Below are positions 47,633 to 58,049 of a stretch of DNA of 64,000 nt, piece by piece. How positions within the stretch are numbered: position 1 is the stretch's first letter; each line of letters begins with the position of its first letter. The stretch lies in the sequence record PP355766.1. One strand, given 5' to 3'. Position numbers and translations under genes: made by a program. Below the pieces are notes generated by a model. The model made no database searches. It was given only the letters and a program-made list of their open reading frames with translations, and was not told where the DNA came from.

Positions 47633-47776
47633 CGGTATGACACAATACAAGATGGTGTAAGCTGAGTAGCGGGATTGCAGTCTCGTTCAGATATGCTATC
47701 GAGTATGGGTGATATATTAAACACATGGATTCTGCAAAGTCAATGTGACTCGGTTCGAGGCCGGGCATACCGTCCA
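47633..47776 (+). ncRNA. 144 nt tRNA-like RNA with inserted domain (size and ends like T4 species 1 RNA)
   Basis: CGGTATG/CATACCG + T + CCA; T arm CTCGG-TTCGAGG-CCGGG; multibranched interior. Confidence 0.75.
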
Positions 47777-47801
47777 ATCACTTGCCATTGAGAATTATAT
47801 T

Positions 47802-47954
47802 ATGAAATATTACGGCTTCAAAACATCCCATTTCGGGAAAGCATATCGTACAGAAAACATTGATAGACGTCGAGCATATTACGAATCACTGCATAAAGCA
47901 GGACGTTCTCGTGCACGACAAGAAGGCCAAAAACAAGCGAAGGAAATAGAATGA
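47802..47954 (+). CDS. Small basic hypothetical protein
   Basis: MKYYGFKTSHFG. Confidence 0.55.
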   Translation: MKYYGFKTSHFGKAYRTENIDRRRAYYESLHKAGRSRARQEGQKQAKEIE

Positions 47955-48319
47955 ATATTTTTATTGGTGTATCAAATGACGTAAATGCTATTACGGTGAA
48001 GCTGTCTTTGGATGGACCGGTTAATTTAGCATTAGGGCTTTCATCTTGTGCTAAACGGGATTTAATGATTAACGCTGACTTTGCATATGCATTTGATGAA
48101 CGCAAAGGTATGTGGGTTTGGATTAAATATCGATACGACACATTACTCAAATATGAGTACTTTAGTGAACGTGATATTCAAGAAATTATTGCTTATCACT
48201 CTGGGTGTAAAATTAATAAACTGCGGCAAGTTACTCCGTTAACCGCTGATACTAATGTAGAGCAACTTGTATTAGATTTTAAACAAATTTGCCAGGCGAA
48301 ATATGATGAAAGATTCTAA
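47951..48319 (+). CDS. Hypothetical protein
   Basis: 122 aa, coupled ORF. Confidence 0.65.
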   Translation: MNIFIGVSNDVNAITVKLSLDGPVNLALGLSSCAKRDLMINADFAYAFDERKGMWVWIKYRYDTLLKYEYFSERDIQEIIAYHSGCKINKLRQVTPLTADTNVEQLVLDFKQICQAKYDERF

Positions 48320-48536
48320 AGGTCGAGAAGTACAAGTTGGTGATATCGTTTTCTACGGAGAACGCACATACAATAAAGGTGGTCGCGGTTCTATGAAGTG
48401 TGGCCGTATTACTGATATTGCTTCAGGATTGGCTAAAGTAGATAACGACTACGTTGCAATGCGAAGCAAATCATTCGTTAAGGTTTCTCCTATGTTCGCA
48501 ACAATGTGGGAAAACGGAACGATTTTCGAGATTTAA
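48303..48536 (+). CDS. Small KOW/SH3-like hypothetical protein
   Basis: KDSKGREVQVGDIVFY. Confidence 0.6.
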   Translation: MMKDSKGREVQVGDIVFYGERTYNKGGRGSMKCGRITDIASGLAKVDNDYVAMRSKSFVKVSPMFATMWENGTIFEI

Positions 48537-48590
48537 TGCTACAAGAATAACCTGTTATTATTACTACATCAAAACAAACAAGGAAAAAGA

Positions 48591-48815
48591 ATGAAACGTA
48601 TCGCACTGATTGTTGACCAAGAAGCTATGTTCGCTGCTACCGGTAAATTTCATCCGGTGAGTAAATTTGTTGCTCGCAGCGAGAAAATCGTTGGTCTGGT
48701 AGAAACTGTCGCAGGTGATGTAATTGTTTCTATTAAAACATCTGAAATTTCTCCGGTGGTTAAAGTAGCAGTTAAAAATGACTTCTGGGAAGTAGCTGAT
48801 TTTATGTGTGAGTAA
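48591..48815 (+). CDS. Hypothetical protein
   Basis: AAGGA SD, 74 aa. Confidence 0.65.
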   Translation: MKRIALIVDQEAMFAATGKFHPVSKFVARSEKIVGLVETVAGDVIVSIKTSEISPVVKVAVKNDFWEVADFMCE

Positions 48816-48848
48816 TTCTGCCTAGCAGGTGGATAAGCCCGACAAGGC

Positions 48849-48868
48849 GCCCTCTTCGGAGGGCTTTT
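48849..48868 (+). terminator. Terminator
   Basis: GCCCTC-TTCG-GAGGGC-TTTT. Confidence 0.85.
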
Positions 48869-48893
48869 ATAAAAGTCGTAAGATTTCTATAAA

Positions 48894-48970
48894 GGCCCTG
48901 TAGCTCAATTGGTAGAGCGTTCCCCTCATAAGGGATTGGTTGCATGTTCGAGTCTTTGCCAGGGTCACCA
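48894..48970 (+). tRNA. tRNA with CAT anticodon, probably Ile2 (lysidine type)
   Basis: GGCCCTG acceptor (C4:G69, C5:G68), CCCC-TCATAA-GGGA like T4 tRNA-Ile; irregular T stem. Confidence 0.78.
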
Positions 48971-48974
48971 AATT

Positions 48975-49284
48975 TACTAGGCTCTGCTAGCCCAAAAACA
49001 ACCAAATTAAAGCCTGTTTCCCATATACCTGATAAGGACCCACGAGAATCAAGTAATACGTTCCACGAAGCACTGTTCTTATCAATCCAAGCGCCGCGAA
49101 CCTTAGGTCCTGTCGCAGGGTTGTTACCTGAAATAGTTATACTAGCATTCCAGACGTTTCTTCCGATCATACTAGACATCATAAATGGTGTTCCCAACCT
49201 TAATTTTGCTCCAGCTGCAATCATTGAAGATTCTCCTGTTACAGCTTTAGCTGAGCTTCCTACATTAGGACCTGTTACTGCCAT
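48975..49284 (-). CDS. gp38: gp38 adhesin-like protein, N-terminal fragment
   Basis: MAVTGP.VGSSA...LRLGTPF.MS resembles T2/S16-type gp38; follows chaperone-tipped gp37. Confidence 0.7.
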
Positions 49285-49321
49285 GATATCTCCTCAAAGA
49301 TGGGGCCGAAGCCCCATAACA

Positions 49322-50370
49322 TTATTTAGATTTAAGTTCTTCAATTTCTGCTTTAAGCTCTTTAACAGATTCGACTAATAACGCAATTACTGCATTATAG
49401 TTTAAACGAAGTAATGCATCTTTATCGTTATCAGTTGTAACTGCTTCAGGAAGAACTTCCTGCACTTCTTGTGCGATAAGGCCAGCTGATGGTTTAGTAT
49501 CACCATTTGGAAGCTGTAAATCATAAACATTACCAGATAGCTTCGACACTTTATCAAGAGCGTTATCAATCTTAGCAATATTTGATTTCACACGACGGTC
49601 AGAACGAATTTCAACGTCCCAGAAATTACCAACACCTTCAACGCGTAGATTAGCAGCACTACCCCAGATTTTTACCCCAGTATCTGTAAGTGCTAACCAC
49701 TGGTCAACTCCAGAGGCGTTATAGAAATGCCATCCAGCGCGAACATATTCACCCGACTGCCACGCGTTAAAGCTATCGAAAAACGTATCACCGCGCTGTA
49801 AACGTATTCCATTTACAGTGTTCCCAGTATCTGTGTTTCCTGGTGCTAAGTGGGCTAATTGCAGATATCCATCATTTCTGAATACAAGCTCTCGACCACT
49901 TTGGTTACGGATAATCATGTCGCCATTTTGGCCGTTAGACCAAATAACGCCTCTGGTGTTACCAGCTGAATCGCGGAACCAGTAGTTAGAGTTTGTACCA
50001 GCTGAACCGGCATCGCAGTAAACATTACCGTTTTTAGCAAAAAGACCACCAGCATTGGTTGTGTCAGCGGCGACTAAGTTTCCGCTAGAAACTTTAAGAC
50101 TGCTACTAACATCTAACCCGCCTCTTAGAGTACTTTTACCATCAACTTCTAACTGCCATGTTTTTAATCTGGTGCCAGTTACGTCAAGGTTACCAGTTAC
50201 AGTACCACCCGCTAACGGAAGATACGTGTCCCCAGCATTACTAATAGCAGAAGCAACCTTATCATCAACATATTTCTTGTTGGTGGCTTGGTTATTCTGC
50301 GTAGGAGCATCGGCAATTTGCACATACTTGGTAGTAGGAACAATAATACCGCCGTTGGCATTAATAACGC
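49322..50370 (-). CDS. gp37: Long tail fibre distal subunit, C-terminal fragment with S74 autochaperone
   Basis: SDRRVKSNI, AGLIAQEVQEVLPEAV, LNYNAVIALLVESVKEL. Confidence 0.88.
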
Positions 50371-51630
50371 TAAAATTACATGATGCAGGTTTTTTACAGA
50401 AATACCCGTAGAGAATACACCGTAACTTGCGACGATAATAATTCCCTTTCCGTTTTCTGCCATAGCCTTTAAAGCATTACGTGTTTCAGTATTAACTTCA
50501 CCTGATACGTAATAAACTTGCTCATGACCAGTAGCTTTAATCATCTCGAATAGCTCTTTACCATGAGCTACATGTTTAAACATCACAAAAGCGTTTTCAT
50601 CACGCGATGCTAGCTTAGCAGCTAGATTAGCAACCCAACGGTTTCTTTTCTTAACATTGGTGATGAATTTAATTTCTTCTTGATACGTTTTGCCTTTTAA
50701 AGCATTTGCTGCTGCATCCGGGTATCTTAAGAAGATTGTATTAATTTTAAGCTCAGTTACTTGTCCGTCTTCCATTAACTTAGAAGTTGATACCGGACGG
50801 AAGATTTCACCAAACATGCCAACATATTGCATGATATTAGCTTTGCCGTCTTTAAGAGAACCAGACAGTCCGTACTTAAACATGCAATTGGTGAGACCCG
50901 CAATGATTGTTGAAATTGACTTTCCTGTTGCAAGATGGCATTCATCATTCATCATCATGCCGAATTGAGAAAACCATTCTTTAGGCTGCTTAACAGCGGT
51001 CTGCCATGTAGATACATAAACTAATGCGTTGGAATCACGAGCAGTACCACCTCGAATACCCAGCATAGCATTGCGAGGAAATAAACGATAATCACAAAAA
51101 TCATCAATCATCTGGTCAACTAACGCTGTGGTAGGAACGATGATAAGAATTTTGCCTTCGTAATTTTCTACATAATAACGAGCAAGTAATGCCTGAATAA
51201 GAGACTTACCGGCAGACGTTGGAAGATTAAGAATTCTACGTCGATTAACTAGACCTTCATATACAGCATCTTTCTGATACCAGTGTGGCTCAATCTTAGT
51301 TAATCCTGAATAAATTTCTTTAGATGCTAACCACGTGTCAAAATCCTCCCGTGAAAGAGTTTCTTGCTCGAATATAGCTGGATCGAAATAAGCTTTATAT
51401 CCGAATTGGTCAGCGAATTTTCTAATTTGGCCAACAAGACCAAACGGTAAGAGACGATTATAATCTAGCAGACGAATTCGTCCATCCCAATGTCCATAAC
51501 GATATTTCGGGTTGAATCTGTATCCATCGGCTTCGAAGCTAAAATAGTCTCTGAGTTCATAGAAAATTGAGTCATCACACTCAATATGAACATGACTAAA
51601 ATCTTTAAATTTGACTTGGATGTCGTGCAC
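50370..51630 (-). CDS. uvsW: UvsW helicase, 3' truncated (GTG start)
   Basis: LPTSAGKS, DECH, GLSGS. Confidence 0.94.
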
Positions 51631-51646
51631 TGTACTATCCTCAGTT

Positions 51647-51668
51647 TATAAATACAATCATATTTATA
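51647..51668. promoter_or_regulatory. Divergent late promoters of inh and uvsW
   Basis: TATAAATA on + at 51647-51654 and on - at 51661-51668. Confidence 0.85.
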
Positions 51669-51688
51669 CATTACATGAGGCACACCCA

Positions 51689-51720
51689 ATGCTAGATAAA
51701 GACTATATTAAAGAAATTCA
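51689..51720 (+). CDS. inh: Prohead protease inhibitor, N-terminal stub
   Basis: MLDKDYIKE resembles T4 MIDKDYIAE; divergent from uvsW. Confidence 0.6.
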
Positions 51721-51838
51721 GATTATAGGTAACTTCTTGCTTCCAGAGGGCAAAGACCCGGGAGACCTAGATGCTGAAGAAGTCGACCAGCTCATCAGAA
51801 ACGTAGAAATCTTGATTGCCGAACATGTCAAGATTTGA
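51720..51838 (+). CDS. T5-like DNA primase, C-terminal fragment
   Basis: LPEGKDPGDL TOPRIM-terminal motif, upstream of T5-like pol. Confidence 0.7.
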
Positions 51839-51844
51839 TATAAT
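51816..51844 (+). promoter_or_regulatory. Sigma70-type promoter for T5-like pol
   Basis: TTGCCG-17 nt-TATAAT. Confidence 0.75.
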
Positions 51845-51905
51845 AATTGGGTAAGTTTGAGAAGAAACACTGACGTTTTACTTGCTTACCTAATAGGAGA
51901 AATCA

Positions 51906-53045
51906 ATGAAAATTGCAGTTGTAGACAAATCACCGAATAACGTCCGCTATCAGAAACACTTCGAACTCTTCGACCATGAGGTTGAGACCTTCTTCATGGC
52001 TAGTGAGAAAGTAACCGGGCGACTGCTCAAGAAACATATCACTATCGGAACACCGGAGAACCCGTTCAATCCGGAAGATTTTGATTACGTTATTCTGGTA
52101 GGTGCAGACCCGTTCTTGAAGTTTGCAGCTAAGAAAGGCATTTCCGATTACTCAGGTAAACGTGTTGAGCACGATGGGTACGCTAACTGGATTGCAAGTA
52201 TCAGTCCGGCCCAGCTCCACTTTAAGCCGGAAATGAAGCCTGTATTTGAAGCCACAGTAGAGAGCATTCATGCCATTCTCAATGGTCGTGAAAAACGCTC
52301 CAAGGCAGGTGATTACCGCCCGATTCAGTGCCCGGATGAAGCCGAAGCGTATGTGAAGATGGTGTATACCATGTGTCCTGGCATGATCGCATATGACTCC
52401 GAAACCAGTGCGCTGTACTGCCGAGATGGTTACATGCTGGGGATCTCAATCTCCCACCAAGAGTATCAGGGCGTGTATATTGATGCAGACGTCATCACAG
52501 AAAATACCGTCTATTACTTACAGAAGCTGTTCGATAGCCCGGAACATGGCGTTGTGTTCCATAACTTGAAGTTTGATATGCACTTCTACTGCTATCACTT
52601 AGGTCTATCCTTTGATAAGGCAGCAGAAGAGAAACGCCTCCACGATACCATGCTGATGCACTACGCCCTAGATGAACGACGTGGTACACACGGTTTGAAA
52701 TCTTTGGCGATGAAGTATACCGATATGGGGGACTACGATTTTGAACTCGACCAGTTCAAGGAGACGTATTGCAAGACGCATAAGATCAAGAAAGAGGATT
52801 TCTCGTATGATCTCATTCCGTTTGATATCATGTGGCCTTACGCAGCGAAGGATACCGATGCAACACTGCGTCTATCCAATTTCTTCCTGCCAAAAGTAGA
52901 AGCTAACCCTCGACTGAAGTCTCTGTATTACGATGTACTGATGCCGGGATGTGTATTCCTACAGCGTATGGAAGACCGTGGTGTACCGATCTCCAAAGAT
53001 CGTCTGAAAGAGGCTCAGGTTCAGTTAATGACTGCGCTACAGCTA
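51906..53045 (+). CDS. pol: T5-like DNA polymerase, N-terminal fragment (3'-5' exonuclease)
   Basis: MKIAVVDKSPNN, AYDSETS, FHNLKFD, YAAKDTDAT. Confidence 0.92.
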
Positions 53046-54329
53046 ATACAGCGGACTTAGGACAAATTAATATTCGCGCAAGAACTACTGGAGGCACTTC
53101 TTCTGGTGATTTTAGCTTCCGTTCTGACGGCCGACTTGATGTTCCTGTAGCAGTTAAAGTTGGTGGTGCAGCAATGCTAACCAAAGACGGGAATATTACA
53201 TCTGGCTCGATGTTTGGCGGTAACCTTAACAACTATTTGACTTCTATTAAAAATGATATCACCACTGGCGATAGTAAGCAAGTAAGCAAGACTGGTGATA
53301 CCATGACCGGTAACTTGACTATTAACGCTAACTTAAAAGTCGAAAATCCTAGTGGAACATTTGTTGATTTAGGTTCAGAGAACTCAGATAAGTACAGCAG
53401 ATTAACCCTTGCTCGTAAAGTTGGCGATGGCGCTGCTGTGGCAATGCTTAAAATTACTCCTGAAGGATATGTGCAATTTGGTTATCAAACTGCAGTTTCT
53501 ACTCCATCTCCTACTAAGTACATCCGAGTTAAACCTGATGGTCTTGATGTAGAAGGTGATTTAGTTTTTAATCAGACCTATCGCGGCACTGAAGAGGCAG
53601 TTGATATTTCTGATAAGACCATTGACCTTAACAGTCTTATCATTAAAAGAACCGACCCAGGTACTCGTCAACTGTATAAATGCATCTCTTCTGGTGGTGG
53701 TTCTAAGATAGCAAACAAACCCACATCTGATGGTAACTTTGTTCTCGAAGTTCTGTCTTTGCGTAAAGTTTCTGATACCGATTGGTCATGTAAGCAGACC
53801 TTTACTACAAAGAATAACACCACTGTTGGCACATATGTTCGCTATGCCCAAAATGGCTCATGGACTGCGTGGAAAGAGGTTGTTGCTGGTGTTCAACCGA
53901 TCAATTTAGGCGGTACTGGAGCAACTTCTGTAGCTGCTGCTCGTAATAATCTTGGTGTTGGTGAAGGACAAACTGTATCATTCGGTAATTTAGTTACCAA
54001 CGACTTAACTGCAAACGGAAACGCTAGATTGGTTGGAAGACTGAACCTTGGTTCTACTTCTGCGACTGGCGTATTACGAGCTAATGAAACTGGTGCGGTT
54101 GTCTTAGGTTCTGCTAGTGGTCAAAACATCCACATCAGAGCAGGAAGCCCCGATACTTCTACTGGTGAAACCCGCTTTGAGCCAAATGGAAACGTTTTAG
54201 TTGGTGGAGTTCTGACGTCTTCAGGAAGCTTGCAAGTAAATGGCGAAGCCACGATGAGCAGAAGCTTGATCGTTTCTCAAAACATAAAGAATACTAACGA
54301 TAATAGTTTTATTCTGATGGGAAAAGATT
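53046..54329 (+). CDS. gp37: Long tail fibre distal subunit, internal fragment
   Basis: VSKTGDTMTGNL, WTAWKE, NLGGTGATS..AARNNLG fibre motifs; T4-like codon usage. Confidence 0.72.
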
Positions 54330-55560
54330 CAGTTAAATTAAAAGATGCTCCAATAGATACTGACCCTTTAAGCCCGACATTTGGTGAAAAGGTATTTGAA
54401 AAGGAAGTATCTCATATAACAGGCAATCCTAAATCTGTATGCTTTAAAATGGATTCCGTTGGAGGCAAAATCTTTGCCCTTATTACCGGGGAAGTTAAAA
54501 CCTTAGGATTAGACCCAACAGACCCACAGAACGTTGTGGATTCTACAACTAAAGGCGTCTATGTTTACCAAGAAGGCACAAATACTTGGAAGCGCGTATT
54601 TGGTAATACCGATGAAGAAAAACGTCGTATAGAGCATTTATGGACTTCTATGTCAACTGACGGAAAGGAAATATTCTTTTCATCAGCAAATTTTAAGACA
54701 ACAGAGTACGCTCAGGATATTGAGCTTGAGACGAAATATCCAGAACTAATTTCTACCGCAGTTAAAAATGTTAACCCAATTCAGTATCACTCTGATAAGC
54801 ATTATCACATGATGAGTTTCCGAGCGGATGAATTTTCAAGATGGGAAACATTTGTTCCTGGACCGATGAGGTTTTATGCTGAGCCTTGGTTTGTCTGGAT
54901 GGCTCGTGAAGGTAACAGATGCTGGATAAGTACAGCTGACCATGCAGTTGTCATTTATAATGATATTCTTTATCAAAAAAGAGTAGATACAGCAGCACAG
55001 GGAACTACCGAGCGCATTCTTTCGGAAGTGTGGGATAAAGGCGACGCAACGTTTTATTGCCCTCCGGTTTCATTTAACGGATTTTTGCAGTATGCTTCTG
55101 GTATCATGTTTCACGAGCCAGATGGAAAGCTGATAGGTTATTATGCATTCGATTATCGTGTTCGTGACCAGGTAACGCTTAACTGGAAACCAACTGATGT
55201 AATGTTTAAGGCGTTTCTGCAGAACCAAACCCGTGAAGAAGATTGGACTCCTGAACATACTCCAGGCTTGCGTGACCCGGATTTACGTCCGTATCTTACT
55301 AAAATGATGCCGGATAGTTACTTGCTACAAGATAGTAATTTTGAGCACTTTTGTAAGTACTATCTCCAATTCCTTTCGGATGGAAATGGAACACATTACA
55401 ACAGTCTCGTTAATCTTGTTAAGAACAAATATCCTCGCGAAGAAAATGCATGGGAATATCTGTGGTCAGAAGTTTATAAACGCAACATTTATCTGAGTAA
55501 AGACGCTCGTGACGCTGTCGTCCGTTTCTTTGAAGCACGCAAGAATGATTTCTATGCTAC
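54330..55560 (+). CDS. gp7: Baseplate wedge gp7, internal fragment
   Basis: RVFGNT.EE.RRIE, DPDLRPYL, YYLQFLSDG, RDAVVRFFE. Confidence 0.9.
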
Positions 55561-55567
55561 AAGTATA

Positions 55568-55690
55568 GCGTCGTGGAGGTGTCACCTTGCAGGGTGATTA
55601 ACAACCGGAGGACTCCTCAGAACCTTGCCGGCAAGGGCTAACCTTCTCTTCTAACACGACGTCTTAATAGGAGAGCTGCAACTCTTCCTA
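55568..55690. ncRNA. Highly structured RNA with complementary hairpin loops
   Basis: GCGTCGTG/CACGACGT stem, TCACC/GGTGA hairpin with TTGCAG loop, palindrome CCTTGCCGGCAAGG, hairpin with CTGCAA loop. Confidence 0.65.
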
Positions 55691-55694
55691 AAAC

Positions 55695-55868
55695 TTACAT
55701 TACATCATATTCTTCAACTAGATATTCGGAATAAGAGTTATTTGCTTTTAGTTCGTCTTTATACTCTTCAGCTTCATGCTTAGTATGAAAAATTTTCCTA
55801 GGTAAAGAAAACTCGTCATATCCATATTCTAAATTCCAGTTAGTTTCTACTACAACATATACTTTCAT
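55695..55868 (-). CDS. Small acidic hypothetical protein (57 aa)
   Basis: GAGGA SD; MKVYVVVETNW...KIFHTKHEAEEY. Confidence 0.65.
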   Translation of the reverse strand: MKVYVVVETNWNLEYGYDEFSLPRKIFHTKHEAEEYKDELKANNSYSEYLVEEYDVM

Positions 55869-55886
55869 ATTTTCCTCATAAATTTT

Positions 55887-55965
55887 TGGTATGGGTAGGA
55901 ATCGAACCTACAAACCATTCAGCGCCAGGGCCTCACGCTCTACCTATTTGAGCTATCACATACCA
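55887..55965 (-). pseudogene. Degenerate tRNA / tRNA-like element
   Basis: Intact D arm (GCTC-AAATAGGTA-GAGC) and T arm (GTAGG-TTCGATT-CCTAC); irregular acceptor stem and 12-nt anticodon loop. Confidence 0.65.
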
Positions 55966-55970
55966 GAATT

Positions 55971-56046
55971 TGGTGCCGGTTGACGGAATCGAACCGCCGA
56001 CCTTCTCATTACAAGTGAGTTGCTCTACCTACTGAGCTAAACCGGC
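55971..56046 (-). tRNA. tRNA-Thr(TGT)
   Basis: Loop CT-TGT-AA, CCA end. Confidence 0.94.
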
Positions 56047-56570
56047 AATTTAAATCTAGTGCAGTTATTATTCAGGTCTTTAATAACTGGGAGAATGTCA
56101 TGAAAGAAAAACCACTCTCCACCTTCTAAATTATTTTTATATTTATCATGGAAATACTTTTCCAGCTTAATAGCTTCTTGAGAATATCTAAATGACAGTA
56201 TTTTATACGTTCTTCCGGGTGAGAATGTATTAGCGGTTGCTGCTCGCTGATCGGGCTCTATAGAACGACCGATCTTATATAAATTTGGATGACGAGTATC
56301 AACCATTATATAAATGAAGGCTTGATTGTAATTTTTGCTTATGTCAAAACAGTCTTTAAATTTTAGCAAGTTTAACGCGGCGGTACGACAGTACAAATTC
56401 CACAATGTTTTCTTTTTAGATAATTTTTTATTTTCAAATTCTTTAATATTGTGGAGTTTAAGCATTGCCACACTTTCAATTAGCTTAGTAGTTACATCAA
56501 AGTTTGTATGACTTATTAATCCAGAATCAATAGCTAATTTAATTTGATTCCAATCTATGTCATTTCTCAT
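56037..56570 (-). CDS. GIY-YIG superfamily (T5orf172-like) endonuclease inside tRNA cluster
   Basis: FIYIM...LYKIGRS...R...LE...H...GGEWF; AT-rich. Confidence 0.75.
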   Translation of the reverse strand: MRNDIDWNQIKLAIDSGLISHTNFDVTTKLIESVAMLKLHNIKEFENKKLSKKKTLWNLYCRTAALNLLKFKDCFDISKNYNQAFIYIMVDTRHPNLYKIGRSIEPDQRAATANTFSPGRTYKILSFRYSQEAIKLEKYFHDKYKNNLEGGEWFFFHDILPVIKDLNNNCTRFKLPV

Positions 56571-56589
56571 AATTTTATCCTCATAAATT

Positions 56590-56666
56590 TGGTACCCCTA
56601 CCAGGACTCGAACCCGGACTACCGACCTTAGAACGATCGTGTGCTAATCCATTACACTATAAGGGC
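56590..56666 (-). tRNA. tRNA-Arg(TCT)
   Basis: CGATC/GGTCG stem, loop GT-TCT-AA, CCA end. Confidence 0.88.
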
Positions 56667-56668
56667 TT

Positions 56669-56755
56669 TGGTGCGTCGAACGAGACTCGAACTCGTACGG
56701 GTTTAATCCCGGGAGATTTTAAGTCTCCTTTGTCTACCAATTCCAACATCGACGC
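56669..56755 (-). tRNA. tRNA-Leu(TAA)
   Basis: Loop CT-TAA-AA, long variable arm, CCA end. Confidence 0.93.
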
Positions 56756-56775
56756 AAATATCATGAGGAAGAACT

Positions 56776-56946
56776 ATGAGTTATGATATTGGCGATTTAA
56801 AAGCTCCACGCATGGTAACTATTTCAGCAGAAGAGCTTGAACGCTTGCAAGCAATTGAAGAACTGCTGTGGGAAATTGAATGTTCGCTTCCATCCGGTTT
56901 AGAAAGCTGGATTGATGATGAAGATTTACAGAAGCTGCGAGGTTAA
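56776..56946 (+). CDS. Small hypothetical protein (56 aa)
   Basis: GAGGA SD; VTISAEELERLQ. Confidence 0.6.
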   Translation: MSYDIGDLKAPRMVTISAEELERLQAIEELLWEIECSLPSGLESWIDDEDLQKLRG

Positions 56947-56947
56947 A

Positions 56948-57337
56948 ATGACTAACGCTGAATTAGTAAAAGAAATCAAGCATATCGCTGGCGTCACTGG
57001 TGGCTGGGACGACAACTACGATTTCGAATATCCGCCTAATGCACCAGACGATGATGCAGAAGAAATCTTTGTTTTAATAGAAGATGGAGATTGGACCCAA
57101 GAGCACAAGTATCAAGACCGCACTCAAATTTGGTATTATCCAGCGCGCGGCGTTCATTTCATGGTATCAGAATCTCGTTCAGGTTCATATCATACTGATT
57201 GGTATTATAGTCCTCCTGAAGTAGATATCGTTTCTCGCCATGAAAAAGTGGTTACTCGCACTGAAGTTGAATGGCGTATTGAACATGATTCTGCTAATGA
57301 TTCTGAACCAACACCATGCAAAGTAGCAAAGGTCTAA
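56948..57337 (+). CDS. Acidic hypothetical protein
   Basis: MTNAELVKEI; SRSGSYHTDWYY motif typical of phage accessory proteins. Confidence 0.65.
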   Translation: MTNAELVKEIKHIAGVTGGWDDNYDFEYPPNAPDDDAEEIFVLIEDGDWTQEHKYQDRTQIWYYPARGVHFMVSESRSGSYHTDWYYSPPEVDIVSRHEKVVTRTEVEWRIEHDSANDSEPTPCKVAKV

Positions 57338-57457
57338 AACCCTGGTATGCGGCTCGATGGGAAACTGTCGAGCCAGAGGAAGATGCTATTCCTGAAGAGG
57401 ATTATAATACCTCTGAACCCACTATAAACGAATTACTTGATTATGAGGACAAAGTGA

Positions 57458-57910
57458 ATGGGACTTATTGGTAAGCAGTTTGAAGTTATTGAGAATGATG
57501 ATGAACTGAGCGAACAATTTCCAGTGTTCATTCCGGGATTTAAGTTCCAAGTCATTTCTGTGGCCAATGAAGATGACCTTGAAATGTGTGGAATTACTGC
57601 TGTAATTGATTTGCTGACAAACAAAATCATTACTATTAACGACCCAACTCCACACGGCGAATCTTGGTTCTGGTGCTTCTACAGCGAAGATACTATGCAC
57701 CAAATTAAAGAAATTGGCCAAGGTGAAGATGTTCCTCTGATTTCTGAAATTAAACTTAATCATTTCCAAGGTGCAATCGTTCCAATTACCAGAGCTCTTT
57801 ATGCCTTTGCTGGGCAGGAAAATTGTGATTCAGAAGAGTATGATTTAATGCAAAAAGCTGCGGATTACATTGTCGCACTTGAACAACGTCTTGGAGTTCG
57901 CCATGTCTAA
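57458..57910 (+). CDS. Hypothetical protein
   Basis: 150 aa, preceded by middle-type promoter at about 57382-57408. Confidence 0.65.
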   Translation: MGLIGKQFEVIENDDELSEQFPVFIPGFKFQVISVANEDDLEMCGITAVIDLLTNKIITINDPTPHGESWFWCFYSEDTMHQIKEIGQGEDVPLISEIKLNHFQGAIVPITRALYAFAGQENCDSEEYDLMQKAADYIVALEQRLGVRHV

Positions 57911-58038
57911 TTGTTCAGGCAGGACTCGAACCTGCACGACTGATTCCGTCGGCGATTTACCACCATCGCCAGCATATGATGCAATATGCGAGCTCAAAAG
58001 GTGTCCGTCACCATGTCTACCGATTTCACCACTGAACA
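57911..58038 (-). ncRNA. 128 nt tRNA-like RNA with inserted hairpins; 3' end at contig junction
   Basis: Perfect TGTTCAG/CTGAACA acceptor, Leu/Ser-type D loop (GGTAGA), canonical T arm GCAGG-TTCGAGT-CCTGC. Confidence 0.72.
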
Positions 58039-58049
58039 AGATAATTATA

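What the first reader, a model, noticed from the sequence alone, without database searches (positions are those of the whole stretch)
47633..58038. Same complementary kissing-loop pair (UUGCAG/CUGCAA) in two unrelated RNAs, and UGCA loop in a third
The RNA at 47633-47776 has hairpin loops TTGCAG (47675-47680) and CTGCAA (47732-47737), which are exact reverse complements. The RNA at 55568-55690, with no other obvious similarity, has the same two hexamers as hairpin loops (55587-55592 and 55676-55681) in the same order. The RNA at 57911-58038 has a 6-nt loop TGCATC (57978-57983). All five loops show the palindromic core UGCA, as in retroviral DIS or phi29 pRNA-type loop-loop contacts. Inference: a shared intramolecular kissing fold, or a code that lets these phage RNAs assemble into homo- or hetero-oligomers. 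I know of no description of this.
Basis: partly seen in the sequence, partly recalled or inferred. Interest (0 to 1): 0.82.

Follow-up and report, generated by a model that had tools for sequence, protein, structure and literature searches.

The report
Complementary loop pairs in phage tRNA-cluster RNAs
Two small non-coding RNAs in the tRNA gene cluster of a T4-like Klebsiella phage, one of them the counterpart of T4's 50-year-old orphan 'species 1' RNA, each carry two hairpin loops that evolution has kept exactly complementary. This points to a loop-loop 'kissing' contact within each RNA kind, not to a code joining three different RNAs.

Summary
The third loop (UGCAUC) is on the minus strand at 57968-57973, ten bases from the stated place.

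RNA1 (47633-47776, +) is the Jiaodavirus orthologue of phage T4 rnaC (species 1 RNA). It is tRNA-like, with a 7-bp acceptor stem, a T arm and an encoded CCA. Across 10 genera its two hexaloops are always exact reverse complements, in three states: UUGACG/CGUCAA, UUGAUG/CAUCAA and UUGCAG/CUGCAA. These are compensatory changes.

RNA2 is transcribed from the minus strand (55562-55694). It belongs to a separate, unannotated family near the distal end of the tRNA operon. Its relatives carry UUGCAG/CUGCAA or CUUGCG/CGCAAG, again compensatory. One relative (EcS1) keeps only UGCA/UGCA.

A conserved 6-bp kissing helix inside each RNA kind is therefore well supported. It could be intramolecular or between copies of the same RNA; sequence cannot tell.

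The "shared code" between the two RNAs is not conserved. Moon, Karamvirus, EcS1-like and most Jiaodavirus genomes carry different pairs in the two RNAs. The UGCA of the third, tRNA-like RNA is not conserved either.

None of the three RNAs is in Rfam. I found no description of the loop complementarity.

The parts
47633..47776 (+). RNA1: orthologue of phage T4 rnaC (species 1 RNA), a 144-nt tRNA-like RNA directly after tRNA-Pro
   Evidence: rnaC covariance model R1 matches full length at 126.5 bits, E 1e-29. An HMM built only from non-Jiaodavirus rnaC sequences finds 47654-47776 at E 4e-8, its only hit in the window.
47633..47639 (+). rnaC acceptor stem, 5' strand (CGGUAUG). It pairs with 47766-47772 (CAUACCG) and is followed by U + CCA at 47773-47776.
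   Evidence: Read from the sequence. Helix 1 is 100% paired with 2 covarying pairs.
47749..47765 (+). rnaC T arm (CUCGG-UUCGAGG-CCGGG)
   Evidence: Helix 6 is 100% paired with 2 covarying pairs; fold.
47675..47680 (+). rnaC loop 1, UUGCAG, at the tip of the long arm
   Evidence: Alignment columns 43-48 pair with 101-106 in 14 of 14 sequences.
47732..47737 (+). rnaC loop 2, CUGCAA, at the tip of hairpin 2; the exact reverse complement of loop 1
55562..55694 (-). RNA2: member of an unannotated small-RNA family near the distal end of the tRNA operon. It has a 5' hairpin A, a closing stem CGUCGUG/CACGACG and an internal hairpin B. Its 3' continuation is cut by an assembly junction near 55561.
   Evidence: Covariance model R2 matches at 141.5 bits on the minus strand only. 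Stems covary. Intact context in KP1079.
55676..55681 (-). RNA2 loop A (UUGCAG on the transcribed minus strand)
55587..55592 (-). RNA2 loop B (CUGCAA on the transcribed minus strand)
57911..58038 (-). RNA3: 128-nt tRNA-like RNA with acceptor stem UGUUCAG/CUGAACA, a class-II-like D arm, T arm GCAGG-UUCGAGU-CCUGC and three extra hairpins. It is not part of the loop-pair feature.
   Evidence: Family HMM hit. Not called as a tRNA by ARAGORN or Rfam. Annotated as a 133-nt tRNA-Ser in one relative.
57968..57973 (-). RNA3 hexaloop UGCAUC (GATGCA on the plus strand). Its UGCA is not conserved.
   Evidence: Homologues have UGAAUC, UGUAUC or UUUAAGCA.

Best explanation
The window comes from a T4-like Klebsiella phage (Jiaodavirus) inside a scrambled GenBank record.

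RNA1 is the phage's copy of T4 rnaC (species 1 RNA). This is a stable, tRNA-like RNA made from the tRNA operon. It has an acceptor stem, a T arm and a CCA end, but a roughly 27-30-bp long arm and a 10-bp hairpin replace the D and anticodon arms. RNA2, on the minus strand, belongs to a second, unnamed RNA family near the distal end of the same operon.

In each RNA the two hexanucleotide hairpin loops form a 6-bp Watson-Crick loop-loop (kissing) helix.

Shown: homology, secondary structure, and loop complementarity kept by compensatory changes. Inferred: that the helix physically forms, and whether it is intra- or intermolecular.

The identical hexamers in RNA1 and RNA2 of this phage are best read as coincidence within a narrow shared format (UUG-NN-G / C-NN-CAA). 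They are not a hetero-assembly code. RNA3 is an unrelated tRNA-like RNA.
For: Identity of RNA1:
- An independent HMM finds it at E 4e-8.
- Covariance model R1 matches full length.
- It lies in the tRNA cluster, as rnaC does in T4.

Structure of rnaC: 97.6% of cells are paired and 25 pairs have double changes, against 14.6 in shuffles. Registers slid by 1-3 columns drop to 34-40% paired.

Kissing helix in rnaC:
- It is 100% paired in 14 distinct sequences from 10 genera.
- Column pair 46/103 is A-U or C-G. Column pair 47/102 is C-G, A-U or U-A.
- The loop states are UUGACG/CGUCAA (T4, Mosig-, Dhaka-, Kanagawa-, Karam-, Moon-, Winkler- and Gelderlandvirus), UUGAUG/CAUCAA (Yersinia Tegunavirus) and UUGCAG/CUGCAA (Jiaodavirus).
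- The loops stay fixed while the adjoining stems covary freely. In Gelderlandvirus the whole long arm has a different sequence yet keeps UUGACG.

RNA2:
- Type I has UUGCAG/CUGCAA and type II has CUUGCG/CGCAAG. At homologous hairpin tips this is A-U changed to G-C.
- Stem A and the closing stem covary.
- G-U pairs and the model match fix the strand.

Chance expectation for such a loop pair is about 0.24 per window. Predicted loop-loop duplexes are -4 to -7 kcal/mol.
Against: - Only two independent compensatory events were found in rnaC and one in RNA2. Searches of IMG/VR and of metagenomes found no further loop states.
- The EcS1 version of RNA2 has CUGCAA in both loops, leaving only a 4-bp UGCA/UGCA match.
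- In type II RNA2 part of the complementary stretch can also pair locally within its own loop.
- For an intramolecular kiss in rnaC, the long arm would have to fold back sharply at the conserved GUA bulge. This is my own geometric estimate, not a computation.
- There are no probing, gel or structural data.
- The function of rnaC is still unknown (PMC3014915, PMC9697503, PMC12685909).
Confidence: 0.7

Rival explanations
1. The shared UUGCAG/CUGCAA (UGCA-core) loops are a code that lets the three different phage RNAs assemble with each other into hetero-oligomers.
For: In this phage and in a minority of Jiaodavirus genomes (KP1079, KEN22, KEN37, AM_K6, BovinicusUrsus, UTI-K4), rnaC and RNA2 carry the same two hexamers, so cross-pairing is chemically possible.
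Against: The match is not conserved.
- Moon, Karamvirus (myPSH1140, PG7) and EcS1 combine rnaC UUGACG/CGUCAA with RNA2 UUGCAG/CUGCAA or CUGCAA/CUGCAA.
- Roth01/JD18-type Jiaodavirus combines rnaC UUGCAG/CUGCAA with RNA2 CUUGCG/CGCAAG.
- T4, Mosig-, Dhaka-, Kanagawa-, Winkler-, Gelderland- and Tegunavirus have rnaC but no RNA2.
- The UGCA of RNA3 is replaced by UGAA, UGUA or a different loop in relatives.
Confidence: 0.07
2. The loops do not pair with each other. Each is a separate binding site for a protein or another nucleic acid that recognises a UUG.../...CAA format, or the pair is a DNA-level inverted repeat. On this view the complementarity is a by-product.
For: Both families share the same outer letters (UUG-NN-G / C-NN-CAA), which could reflect a common ligand. 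The rnaC core GAGUAGCG...CGUUCRGAUAUG is almost invariant and looks like a binding site.
Against: - The variable inner letters change together in both loops, three times, and always restore Watson-Crick complementarity.
- A ligand that reads each loop separately would not demand this.
- The spacing between the hexamers differs between the two RNAs (51 nt against 83 nt between the hexamers).
- The hexamers sit exactly at the tips of RNA hairpins whose stems covary. This argues for an RNA-level rather than a DNA-level feature.
Confidence: 0.12
3. This is a sub-question within the best explanation. It is not an intramolecular tertiary contact.
For: - In rnaC the two arms are very unequal (about 30 against 10 helical layers). 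An intramolecular kiss therefore needs a near-reversal of the long arm, whereas a symmetric dimer closes without strain (inference).
- Phage ncRNAs next to tRNA islands (ROOL, GOLLD) proved to be homo-oligomers. Some of their covarying 'tertiary' kissing loops turned out to be intermolecular (PMC12286853).
- RNAs under 200 nt, including the manA motif found partly in cyanobacteria-infecting phages, assemble through kissing loops (bioRxiv 10.64898/2026.07.01.735769).
Against: - Covariation cannot separate pairing in cis from pairing in trans.
- In RNA2 the geometry looks compatible with an intramolecular contact.
- There are no data on oligomeric state.
Confidence: 0.35

Closest known systems
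Phage T4 rnaC (species 1 RNA; NC_000866 70908-71046)
   Same: RNA1 is its homologue. It has the same four-part fold (acceptor stem, long arm, hairpin 2, T arm), about the same length (144 against 140 nt), the same conserved core GAGUAGCG...CGUUCRGAUAUG, and the same place and strand in the tRNA cluster. T4 rnaC also has complementary hexaloops.
   Different: The loop pair is UUGCAG/CUGCAA instead of UUGACG/CGUCAA. The acceptor stem is fully paired and followed by an encoded UCCA, whereas T4 has two U-U mismatches and UACA. Its neighbour is tRNA-Pro rather than rnaD.
Phage T4 rnaD (species 2 RNA)
   Same: Like RNA2, it is a small RNA of unknown function in the distal part of the tRNA operon. 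It also has a 5' hairpin followed by a CGUCG...CGGCG closing stem (read by eye).
   Different: No detectable homology: the rnaD HMM finds nothing in the window, and the RNA2 model finds nothing in T4, Mosigvirus or Dhakavirus. No conserved complementary loop pair was seen in the rnaD alignment.
   Same: A small phage RNA with two loops that are complementary to each other and kept so by covariation among relatives (my knowledge of the pRNA literature). This is the same logic as seen here.
   Different: There is no sequence or structure match (no Rfam hit). pRNA pairs 4 nt and is part of the DNA-packaging motor of a podovirus. These RNAs pair 6 nt, are tRNA-operon products of T4-like myoviruses, and to my knowledge are dispensable in T4 deletion strains.
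ROOL, GOLLD and manA RNAs (phage-associated self-assembling ncRNAs)
   Same: ROOL and GOLLD are encoded by phages and prophages, often beside tRNA islands, and their function is unknown. Covarying kissing loops in them turned out to be intermolecular bridges (PMC12286853; bioRxiv 10.64898/2026.07.01.735769).
   Different: ROOL and GOLLD are several times larger than these RNAs and have many contacts. There is no Rfam match here, and oligomerisation of rnaC or RNA2 is untested.
Six-base fully paired kissing complexes (HIV TAR-TAR*, ColE1 RNA I-RNA II) and the retroviral DIS
   Same: Hairpin hexaloops in which every loop base can pair with a complementary hexaloop.
   Different: DIS loops are palindromic and pair with the same loop of a second molecule. 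Here the conserved feature is complementarity between two different loops. The palindromic UGCA core is present only in some lineages.

Membership tests
T4 rnaC / species 1 RNA (for RNA1) | Sequence homology to T4 rnaC and its relatives | tested here: met
   An HMM of 11 non-Jiaodavirus rnaC sequences hits window 47654-47776 at E 4.3e-8, its only hit. T4 rnaC alone gives E 7e-4.
T4 rnaC / species 1 RNA (for RNA1) | Shared secondary structure: acceptor stem, long bulged arm, second hairpin, T arm | tested here: met
   97.6% of cells are paired, and 25 of 44 pairs have double changes. Slid registers give 34-40% paired. Covariance model R1 matches full length.
T4 rnaC / species 1 RNA (for RNA1) | Encoded within the phage tRNA gene cluster on the tRNA strand | tested here: met
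   It lies 6 nt after tRNA-Pro on the same strand. The place is the same in the intact relative Roth01. T4 layout.
T4 rnaC / species 1 RNA (for RNA1) | Accumulates as a stable processed RNA in infection | not testable with these tools
   Known for T4 (northern blot in PMC9697503). There are no expression data for this phage.
T4 rnaD / species 2 RNA (for RNA2) | Sequence or structure homology to T4 rnaD | tested here: not met
   The rnaD HMM gives no hit in the window at E up to 10. RNA2 model R2 gives no hit in T4, Mosigvirus or Dhakavirus loci.
   rnaC has three states and RNA2 two fully complementary states.
   This needs gels, SEC-MALS or cryo-EM.
   No Rfam family, pRNA included, matches the window or KP1079 at these places. 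The genomic context is the tRNA operon.
Retroviral DIS-type self-complementary loop | A palindromic loop sequence is the conserved element | tested here: not met
   Most rnaC loops (UUGACG, UUGAUG) are not palindromic. The RNA3 loop varies among UGCAUC, UGAAUC and UGUAUC.
Canonical tRNA (for RNA1 and RNA3) | Cloverleaf with a 7-nt anticodon loop, recognised by tRNA models | tested here: not met
   ARAGORN and the Rfam tRNA model tRNAs in the window but neither of these RNAs. An E-value-threshold scan (max E 1) of KP1079 also gives no hit at RNA3. Both have only the acceptor and T arms, plus a D arm in RNA3.
ROOL / GOLLD | Match to the family models | tested here: not met
   No Rfam hit. The resemblance is by context and by the kissing-loop motif only.

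The most novel reading that the evidence does not exclude
rnaC (T4 species 1 RNA) and the RNA2 family may be small self-assembling RNAs. That would make them miniature relatives, in principle, of ROOL and GOLLD, and would give a first physical property to an RNA whose function has been unknown since the 1970s.
Probability: 0.3. Interest if true: 0.8.

Novelty: new member of a known kind. Interest (0 to 1): 0.55.

Why it matters
T4 rnaC and rnaD are among the oldest known phage non-coding RNAs, and they still have no function (PMC3014915, PMC9697503, PMC12685909).

A loop-loop contact preserved by compensatory changes across ten genera is a concrete, testable structural constraint. It tells experimenters which twelve bases to mutate, and it suggests a simple cis-versus-trans complementation test for self-assembly.

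It also links these RNAs conceptually to the phage ncRNAs beside tRNA islands that were recently found to form RNA-only assemblies.

The work further defines two RNA families that are missing from Rfam (RNA2 and the tRNA-like RNA3). In GenBank they are currently covered by spurious small ORFs or by a doubtful 'tRNA-Ser' call.

Tried and rejected
- blastn in 'distant' mode with RNA1 found only Jiaodavirus copies at 95% identity or more. The link to T4 rnaC needed nhmmer and a covariance model.
- Wider searches for new rnaC loop states found no fourth state. They returned only Jiaodavirus and Tegunavirus copies.
- rnaC is absent from the Acinetobacter (Mokit), Krischvirus (MIZ3), Slopekvirus and Gaprivervirus regions that I fetched, so no deeper comparison was possible.
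- T4 rnaD as a homologue of RNA2: rejected. I looked by eye for a complementary loop pair in rnaD, and for an rnaD loop pairing with the rnaC GUAGCG bulge. Only 3-5-nt matches turned up, and they do not covary.
- I looked for a partner of the variable base in the RNA3 loop and found none.
- A relaxed scan for complementary loop pairs in 19 T4-like tRNA regions gave 51 hits against 13 in shuffles. Apart from rnaC and RNA2, these were palindromic T loops of neighbouring tRNAs or matches in near-identical genomes.
- MAFFT misaligns loop B of type II RNA2, so that compensatory change was read from sequences and folds rather than from a column count.
- Literature: four library searches gave no description of loop complementarity in rnaC. 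Miller et al. 2003 was not held, and the 1970s sequence papers are not in the library, so an old mention cannot be excluded.
- The terminator scan did not list the GCCCUGUC-UUCG-GACGGGGC-U5 hairpin after RNA2 in KP1079. I read it directly from the sequence.

Full report
**Where the window comes from.** The window is identical to positions 186001-250000 of GenBank PP355766.1, Klebsiella phage vB_Kpn_AM_K4, a 288,685-bp record. That record is a mosaic. Within 48980-55560 alone, successive pieces match a Jiaodavirus (T4-like) helicase gene, a T5-like DNA polymerase/primase, and a Slopekvirus tail-fibre gene. The three RNAs of the finding all belong to the T4-like (Jiaodavirus, JD18-type) component. 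I therefore took their natural order from intact relatives:
- In Roth01 (L001)...tRNA-Gly, tRNA-Pro, RNA1, four ORFs, tRNA-Met, two ORFs, RNA3, tRNA-Arg, tRNA-Leu, tRNA-Thr, and an RNA2-like RNA.
- In KP1079 (L191): RNA3, tRNA-Leu, tRNA-Arg, a nuclease-like ORF, tRNA-Thr, a degenerate tRNA-like element, a 57-codon ORF, RNA2, about 100 nt more, and then a GC-rich hairpin with a U5 tail.
- All of these lie on one strand. In the window that strand is plus for RNA1 and minus for RNA2 and RNA3.

**Check of the observation.**
- TTGCAG is at 47675-47680 and 55587-55592. CTGCAA is at 47732-47737 and 55676-55681.
- In minimum-free-energy folds all four lie in hairpin loops. RNAfold leaves all six bases unpaired at 47732-47737 and 55587-55592; at the other two it adds one U-G pair and leaves four unpaired.
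- The hexamer as such is not enriched: 40 matches against 37.3 expected.
- A pair of hexaloop hairpins with reverse-complementary loops within 150 nt is rare, at about 0.24 expected per window on both strands.
- The third loop is misplaced in the finding. The hairpin is GCATAT-GATGCA-ATATGC, with the loop at 57968-57973, and it reads UGCAUC only on the minus strand.

**RNA1 is the T4 rnaC (species 1 RNA) homologue.**
- T4 annotates rnaC and rnaD directly after tRNA-Arg.
- T4 rnaC and RNA1 share the block GUAAGCYGAGUAGCG...CGUUCRGAUAUG and the whole architecture.
- An HMM built only from non-Jiaodavirus rnaC sequences finds 47654-47776 at E 4.3e-8, its only hit in the window. A covariance model matches 47633-47776 end to end.
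- The fold has four parts: a 7-bp acceptor stem (CGGUAUG/CAUACCG) followed by U and an encoded CCA; a long bulged arm ending in loop 1; after a roughly 10-nt linker, a second hairpin ending in loop 2; and, one base later, a T arm (CUCGG-UUCGAGG-CCGGG).
- On 14 distinct sequences, 97.6% of cells pair. Of 44 pairs, 25 show changes on both sides, against 14.6 in shuffles. Registers slid by 1-3 columns drop to 34-40% paired.
- rnaC is therefore a tRNA-like RNA in which only the acceptor/T half is tRNA-shaped. ARAGORN and Rfam do not call it a tRNA, and no Rfam family covers it.

**The loop pair in rnaC covaries.** Loop 1 and loop 2 are exact reverse complements in every sequence. Three states exist:

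| Loop 1 / loop 2 | Lineages |
|---|---|
| UUGACG / CGUCAA | T4 and other Tequatrovirus, Mosig-, Dhaka-, Kanagawa-, Karam-, Moon-, Winkler- and Gelderlandvirus |
| UUGAUG / CAUCAA | Yersinia phages TG1 and fHe-Yen9-01 (Tegunavirus) |
| UUGCAG / CUGCAA | Jiaodavirus, including eight metagenomic copies |

- Counted as a helix (columns 43-48 with 101-106), all 84 cells pair. Column pair 46/103 is A-U or C-G. Column pair 47/102 is C-G, A-U or U-A.
- The loops are otherwise frozen while the stems beneath them change freely. The hairpin-2 stem has changes on both sides in 9 of its 10 pairs.
- In Gelderlandvirus the entire long arm has a different sequence, yet it keeps its length and the loop UUGACG.
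- This is the pattern expected if the two loops must pair with each other.

**RNA2 is a different family with the same design.**
- nhmmer and a covariance model place it at 55562-55694 on the minus strand.
- G-U pairs in hairpin A (Moon) and in the closing stem (myPSH1140) would be A-C mismatches on the other strand.
- The fold is: 5' hairpin A, a linker, and a closing stem CGUCGUG/CACGACG that encloses two or three hairpins. The last of these is hairpin B. The closing stem covaries G-C to A-U in 5 of 11 sequences, and stem A covaries (GAAGAG/CUCUCC to GAUGGG/CCCGCC in BovinicusUrsus).
- The family occurs in 40 phage records: Karamvirus, Moonvirus, EcS1, and a minority of Jiaodavirus. A second type occurs in most Jiaodavirus genomes and in some Karamvirus genomes.
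- Type I loops are UUGCAG and CUGCAA. Type II tips carry CUUGCG and CGCAAG. At the homologous position an A-U pair has become G-C and the helix is shifted by one base, but it still has six complementary bases.
- EcS1 is the exception: CUGCAA is in both loops, leaving only a 4-bp UGCA/UGCA match.
- The T4 rnaD HMM finds nothing in the window. The RNA2 model finds nothing in T4, Mosig-, Dhaka-, Kanagawa-, Winkler-, Gelderland- or Tegunavirus. RNA2 is therefore not detectably rnaD.
- No Rfam family matches it.

**Is the shared hexamer pair a code between RNAs?** Compared genome by genome, it is not conserved:

| Genome type | rnaC loops | RNA2 loops |
|---|---|---|
| Moon, myPSH1140, PG7 | UUGACG / CGUCAA | UUGCAG / CUGCAA |
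| EcS1 | UUGACG / CGUCAA | CUGCAA / CUGCAA |
| Roth01/JD18-type Jiaodavirus | UUGCAG / CUGCAA | CUUGCG / CGCAAG |
| KP1079 group, including this window | UUGCAG / CUGCAA | UUGCAG / CUGCAA |

Many genera have rnaC and no RNA2. Both families do keep the same outer letters (UUG-NN-G / C-NN-CAA), so two RNAs can share the inner dinucleotide by chance about once in 16. Why the frame itself is shared is unexplained. It could reflect the geometry of a fully paired hexaloop kiss, a common ligand, or common descent of the hairpins.

**RNA3.** It is a 128-nt tRNA-like RNA on the minus strand.
- It has an acceptor stem, a class-II-type D arm and a T arm. About 75 nt of extra hairpins stand where the anticodon and variable arms would be.
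- The putative anticodon loop lacks U33 in most homologues.
- One GenBank record calls it a 133-nt tRNA-Ser. ARAGORN and Rfam do not call it.
- Its hexaloop is UGCAUC in Jiaodavirus, UGAAUC in Karamvirus, UGUAUC in one IMG/VR relative (L014), and an unrelated 8-nt loop in EcS1 and Winklervirus. I found no covarying partner. Its UGCA is incidental.

**Mechanism.**
- Shown: homology, folds, and loop-loop complementarity preserved by compensatory change in two RNA families.
- Inferred: the loops form a 6-bp kissing helix. Predicted duplex energies are -4 to -7 kcal/mol.
- Covariation cannot tell whether the helix forms within one molecule or between copies of the same RNA.
- My geometric estimate for rnaC is as follows. 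Hairpin 2 (10 bp) plus the kiss (6 bp) plus the distal part of the long arm (6 bp) makes about 22 stacked pairs. That roughly equals the proximal part of the long arm, so ring closure within one molecule is possible, but only if the arm nearly reverses at the invariant GUA bulge.
- Recent cryo-EM work bears on this. ROOL and GOLLD, phage ncRNAs often found next to tRNA islands, are homo-oligomers, and some of their covarying 'tertiary' kissing loops are in fact intermolecular (PMC12286853). RNAs under 200 nt can also assemble through kissing loops (bioRxiv 10.64898/2026.07.01.735769). I therefore give the intermolecular version about one chance in three.
- The biological role remains open. The papers I could read still list rnaC and rnaD as of unknown function; they are late, abundant RNAs (PMC3014915, PMC9697503, PMC12685909).

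**Novelty and verdict.** rnaC is a known gene and kissing loops are a known motif. New, as far as I could search, are three things: the conserved and compensated loop-loop complementarity in rnaC; a second, unannotated family built on the same principle; and the tRNA-like RNA3 family. The hetero-oligomer code and the third RNA do not.

Noticed in passing
window 48980-58040 (junctions near 50369, 51722, 53045, 55561, 57908): The source record PP355766.1 (288,685 bp) is a mosaic of a Jiaodavirus (T4-like), a T5-like phage (DNA polymerase/primase at about 51722-53044) and Slopekvirus-like tail-fibre sequence. It is probably a mis-assembly of a mixed lysate. One junction cuts the 3' continuation of RNA2, and another abuts the 3' end of RNA3.
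   Followed up: partly
window 55895-55968 (-); L191 1229-1304: A degenerate tRNA-like element lies directly after tRNA-Thr. It scores 21.3 bits on the Rfam tRNA model, below the 29-bit threshold, and ARAGORN does not call it. It has a good acceptor stem, D arm and T arm, but an aberrant anticodon region.
   Followed up: partly
window 56037-56570 (-): A 177-codon ORF between tRNA-Arg and tRNA-Thr carries a T5orf172/MUG113 domain (E 2e-7 to 4e-7). This domain looks nuclease-related to me, so the ORF may be a homing-endonuclease-like insert, analogous to segB in the T4 tRNA cluster. It is absent at that place in Roth01.
   Followed up: partly
L001 6162-6260 and 8871-8963; L188 1-50: GenBank annotations cover these RNAs with doubtful features. 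In Roth01 a hypothetical CDS lies over rnaC and a 93-nt 'anti-CBASS protein acb1' CDS lies over type II RNA2. In BovinicusUrsus RNA3 is annotated as a 133-nt tRNA-Ser.
   Followed up: no
L191 1630-1745 (KP1079; the region missing from the window): RNA2 is followed by about 100 nt of conserved, structured sequence (UCUUUGGAUGAGACUGAUGCCUCCGAGUCCAAAGGA...) and then GCCCUGUC-UUCG-GACGGGGC-U5. This is shared by type I and type II loci. The true 3' end of RNA2 may lie here.
   Followed up: no
window 47663-47692 and rnaC homologues: The most conserved part of rnaC is not the loops. It is CYGAGUAGCG/CGUUCRG, with an invariant 3-nt GUA bulge and an adjacent AG/A internal loop. It does not fit a kink-turn consensus. 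It may be a bend or a protein-binding site.
   Followed up: no
rnaC T loop in L013/L021 (Kanagawavirus) and L176 (Winklervirus): The canonical T loop UUCGAAU is replaced by UGCAUGC or UGCAUCC in these genera, while the T stem is kept. A tRNA-type elbow is therefore not a universal feature of rnaC.
   Followed up: no
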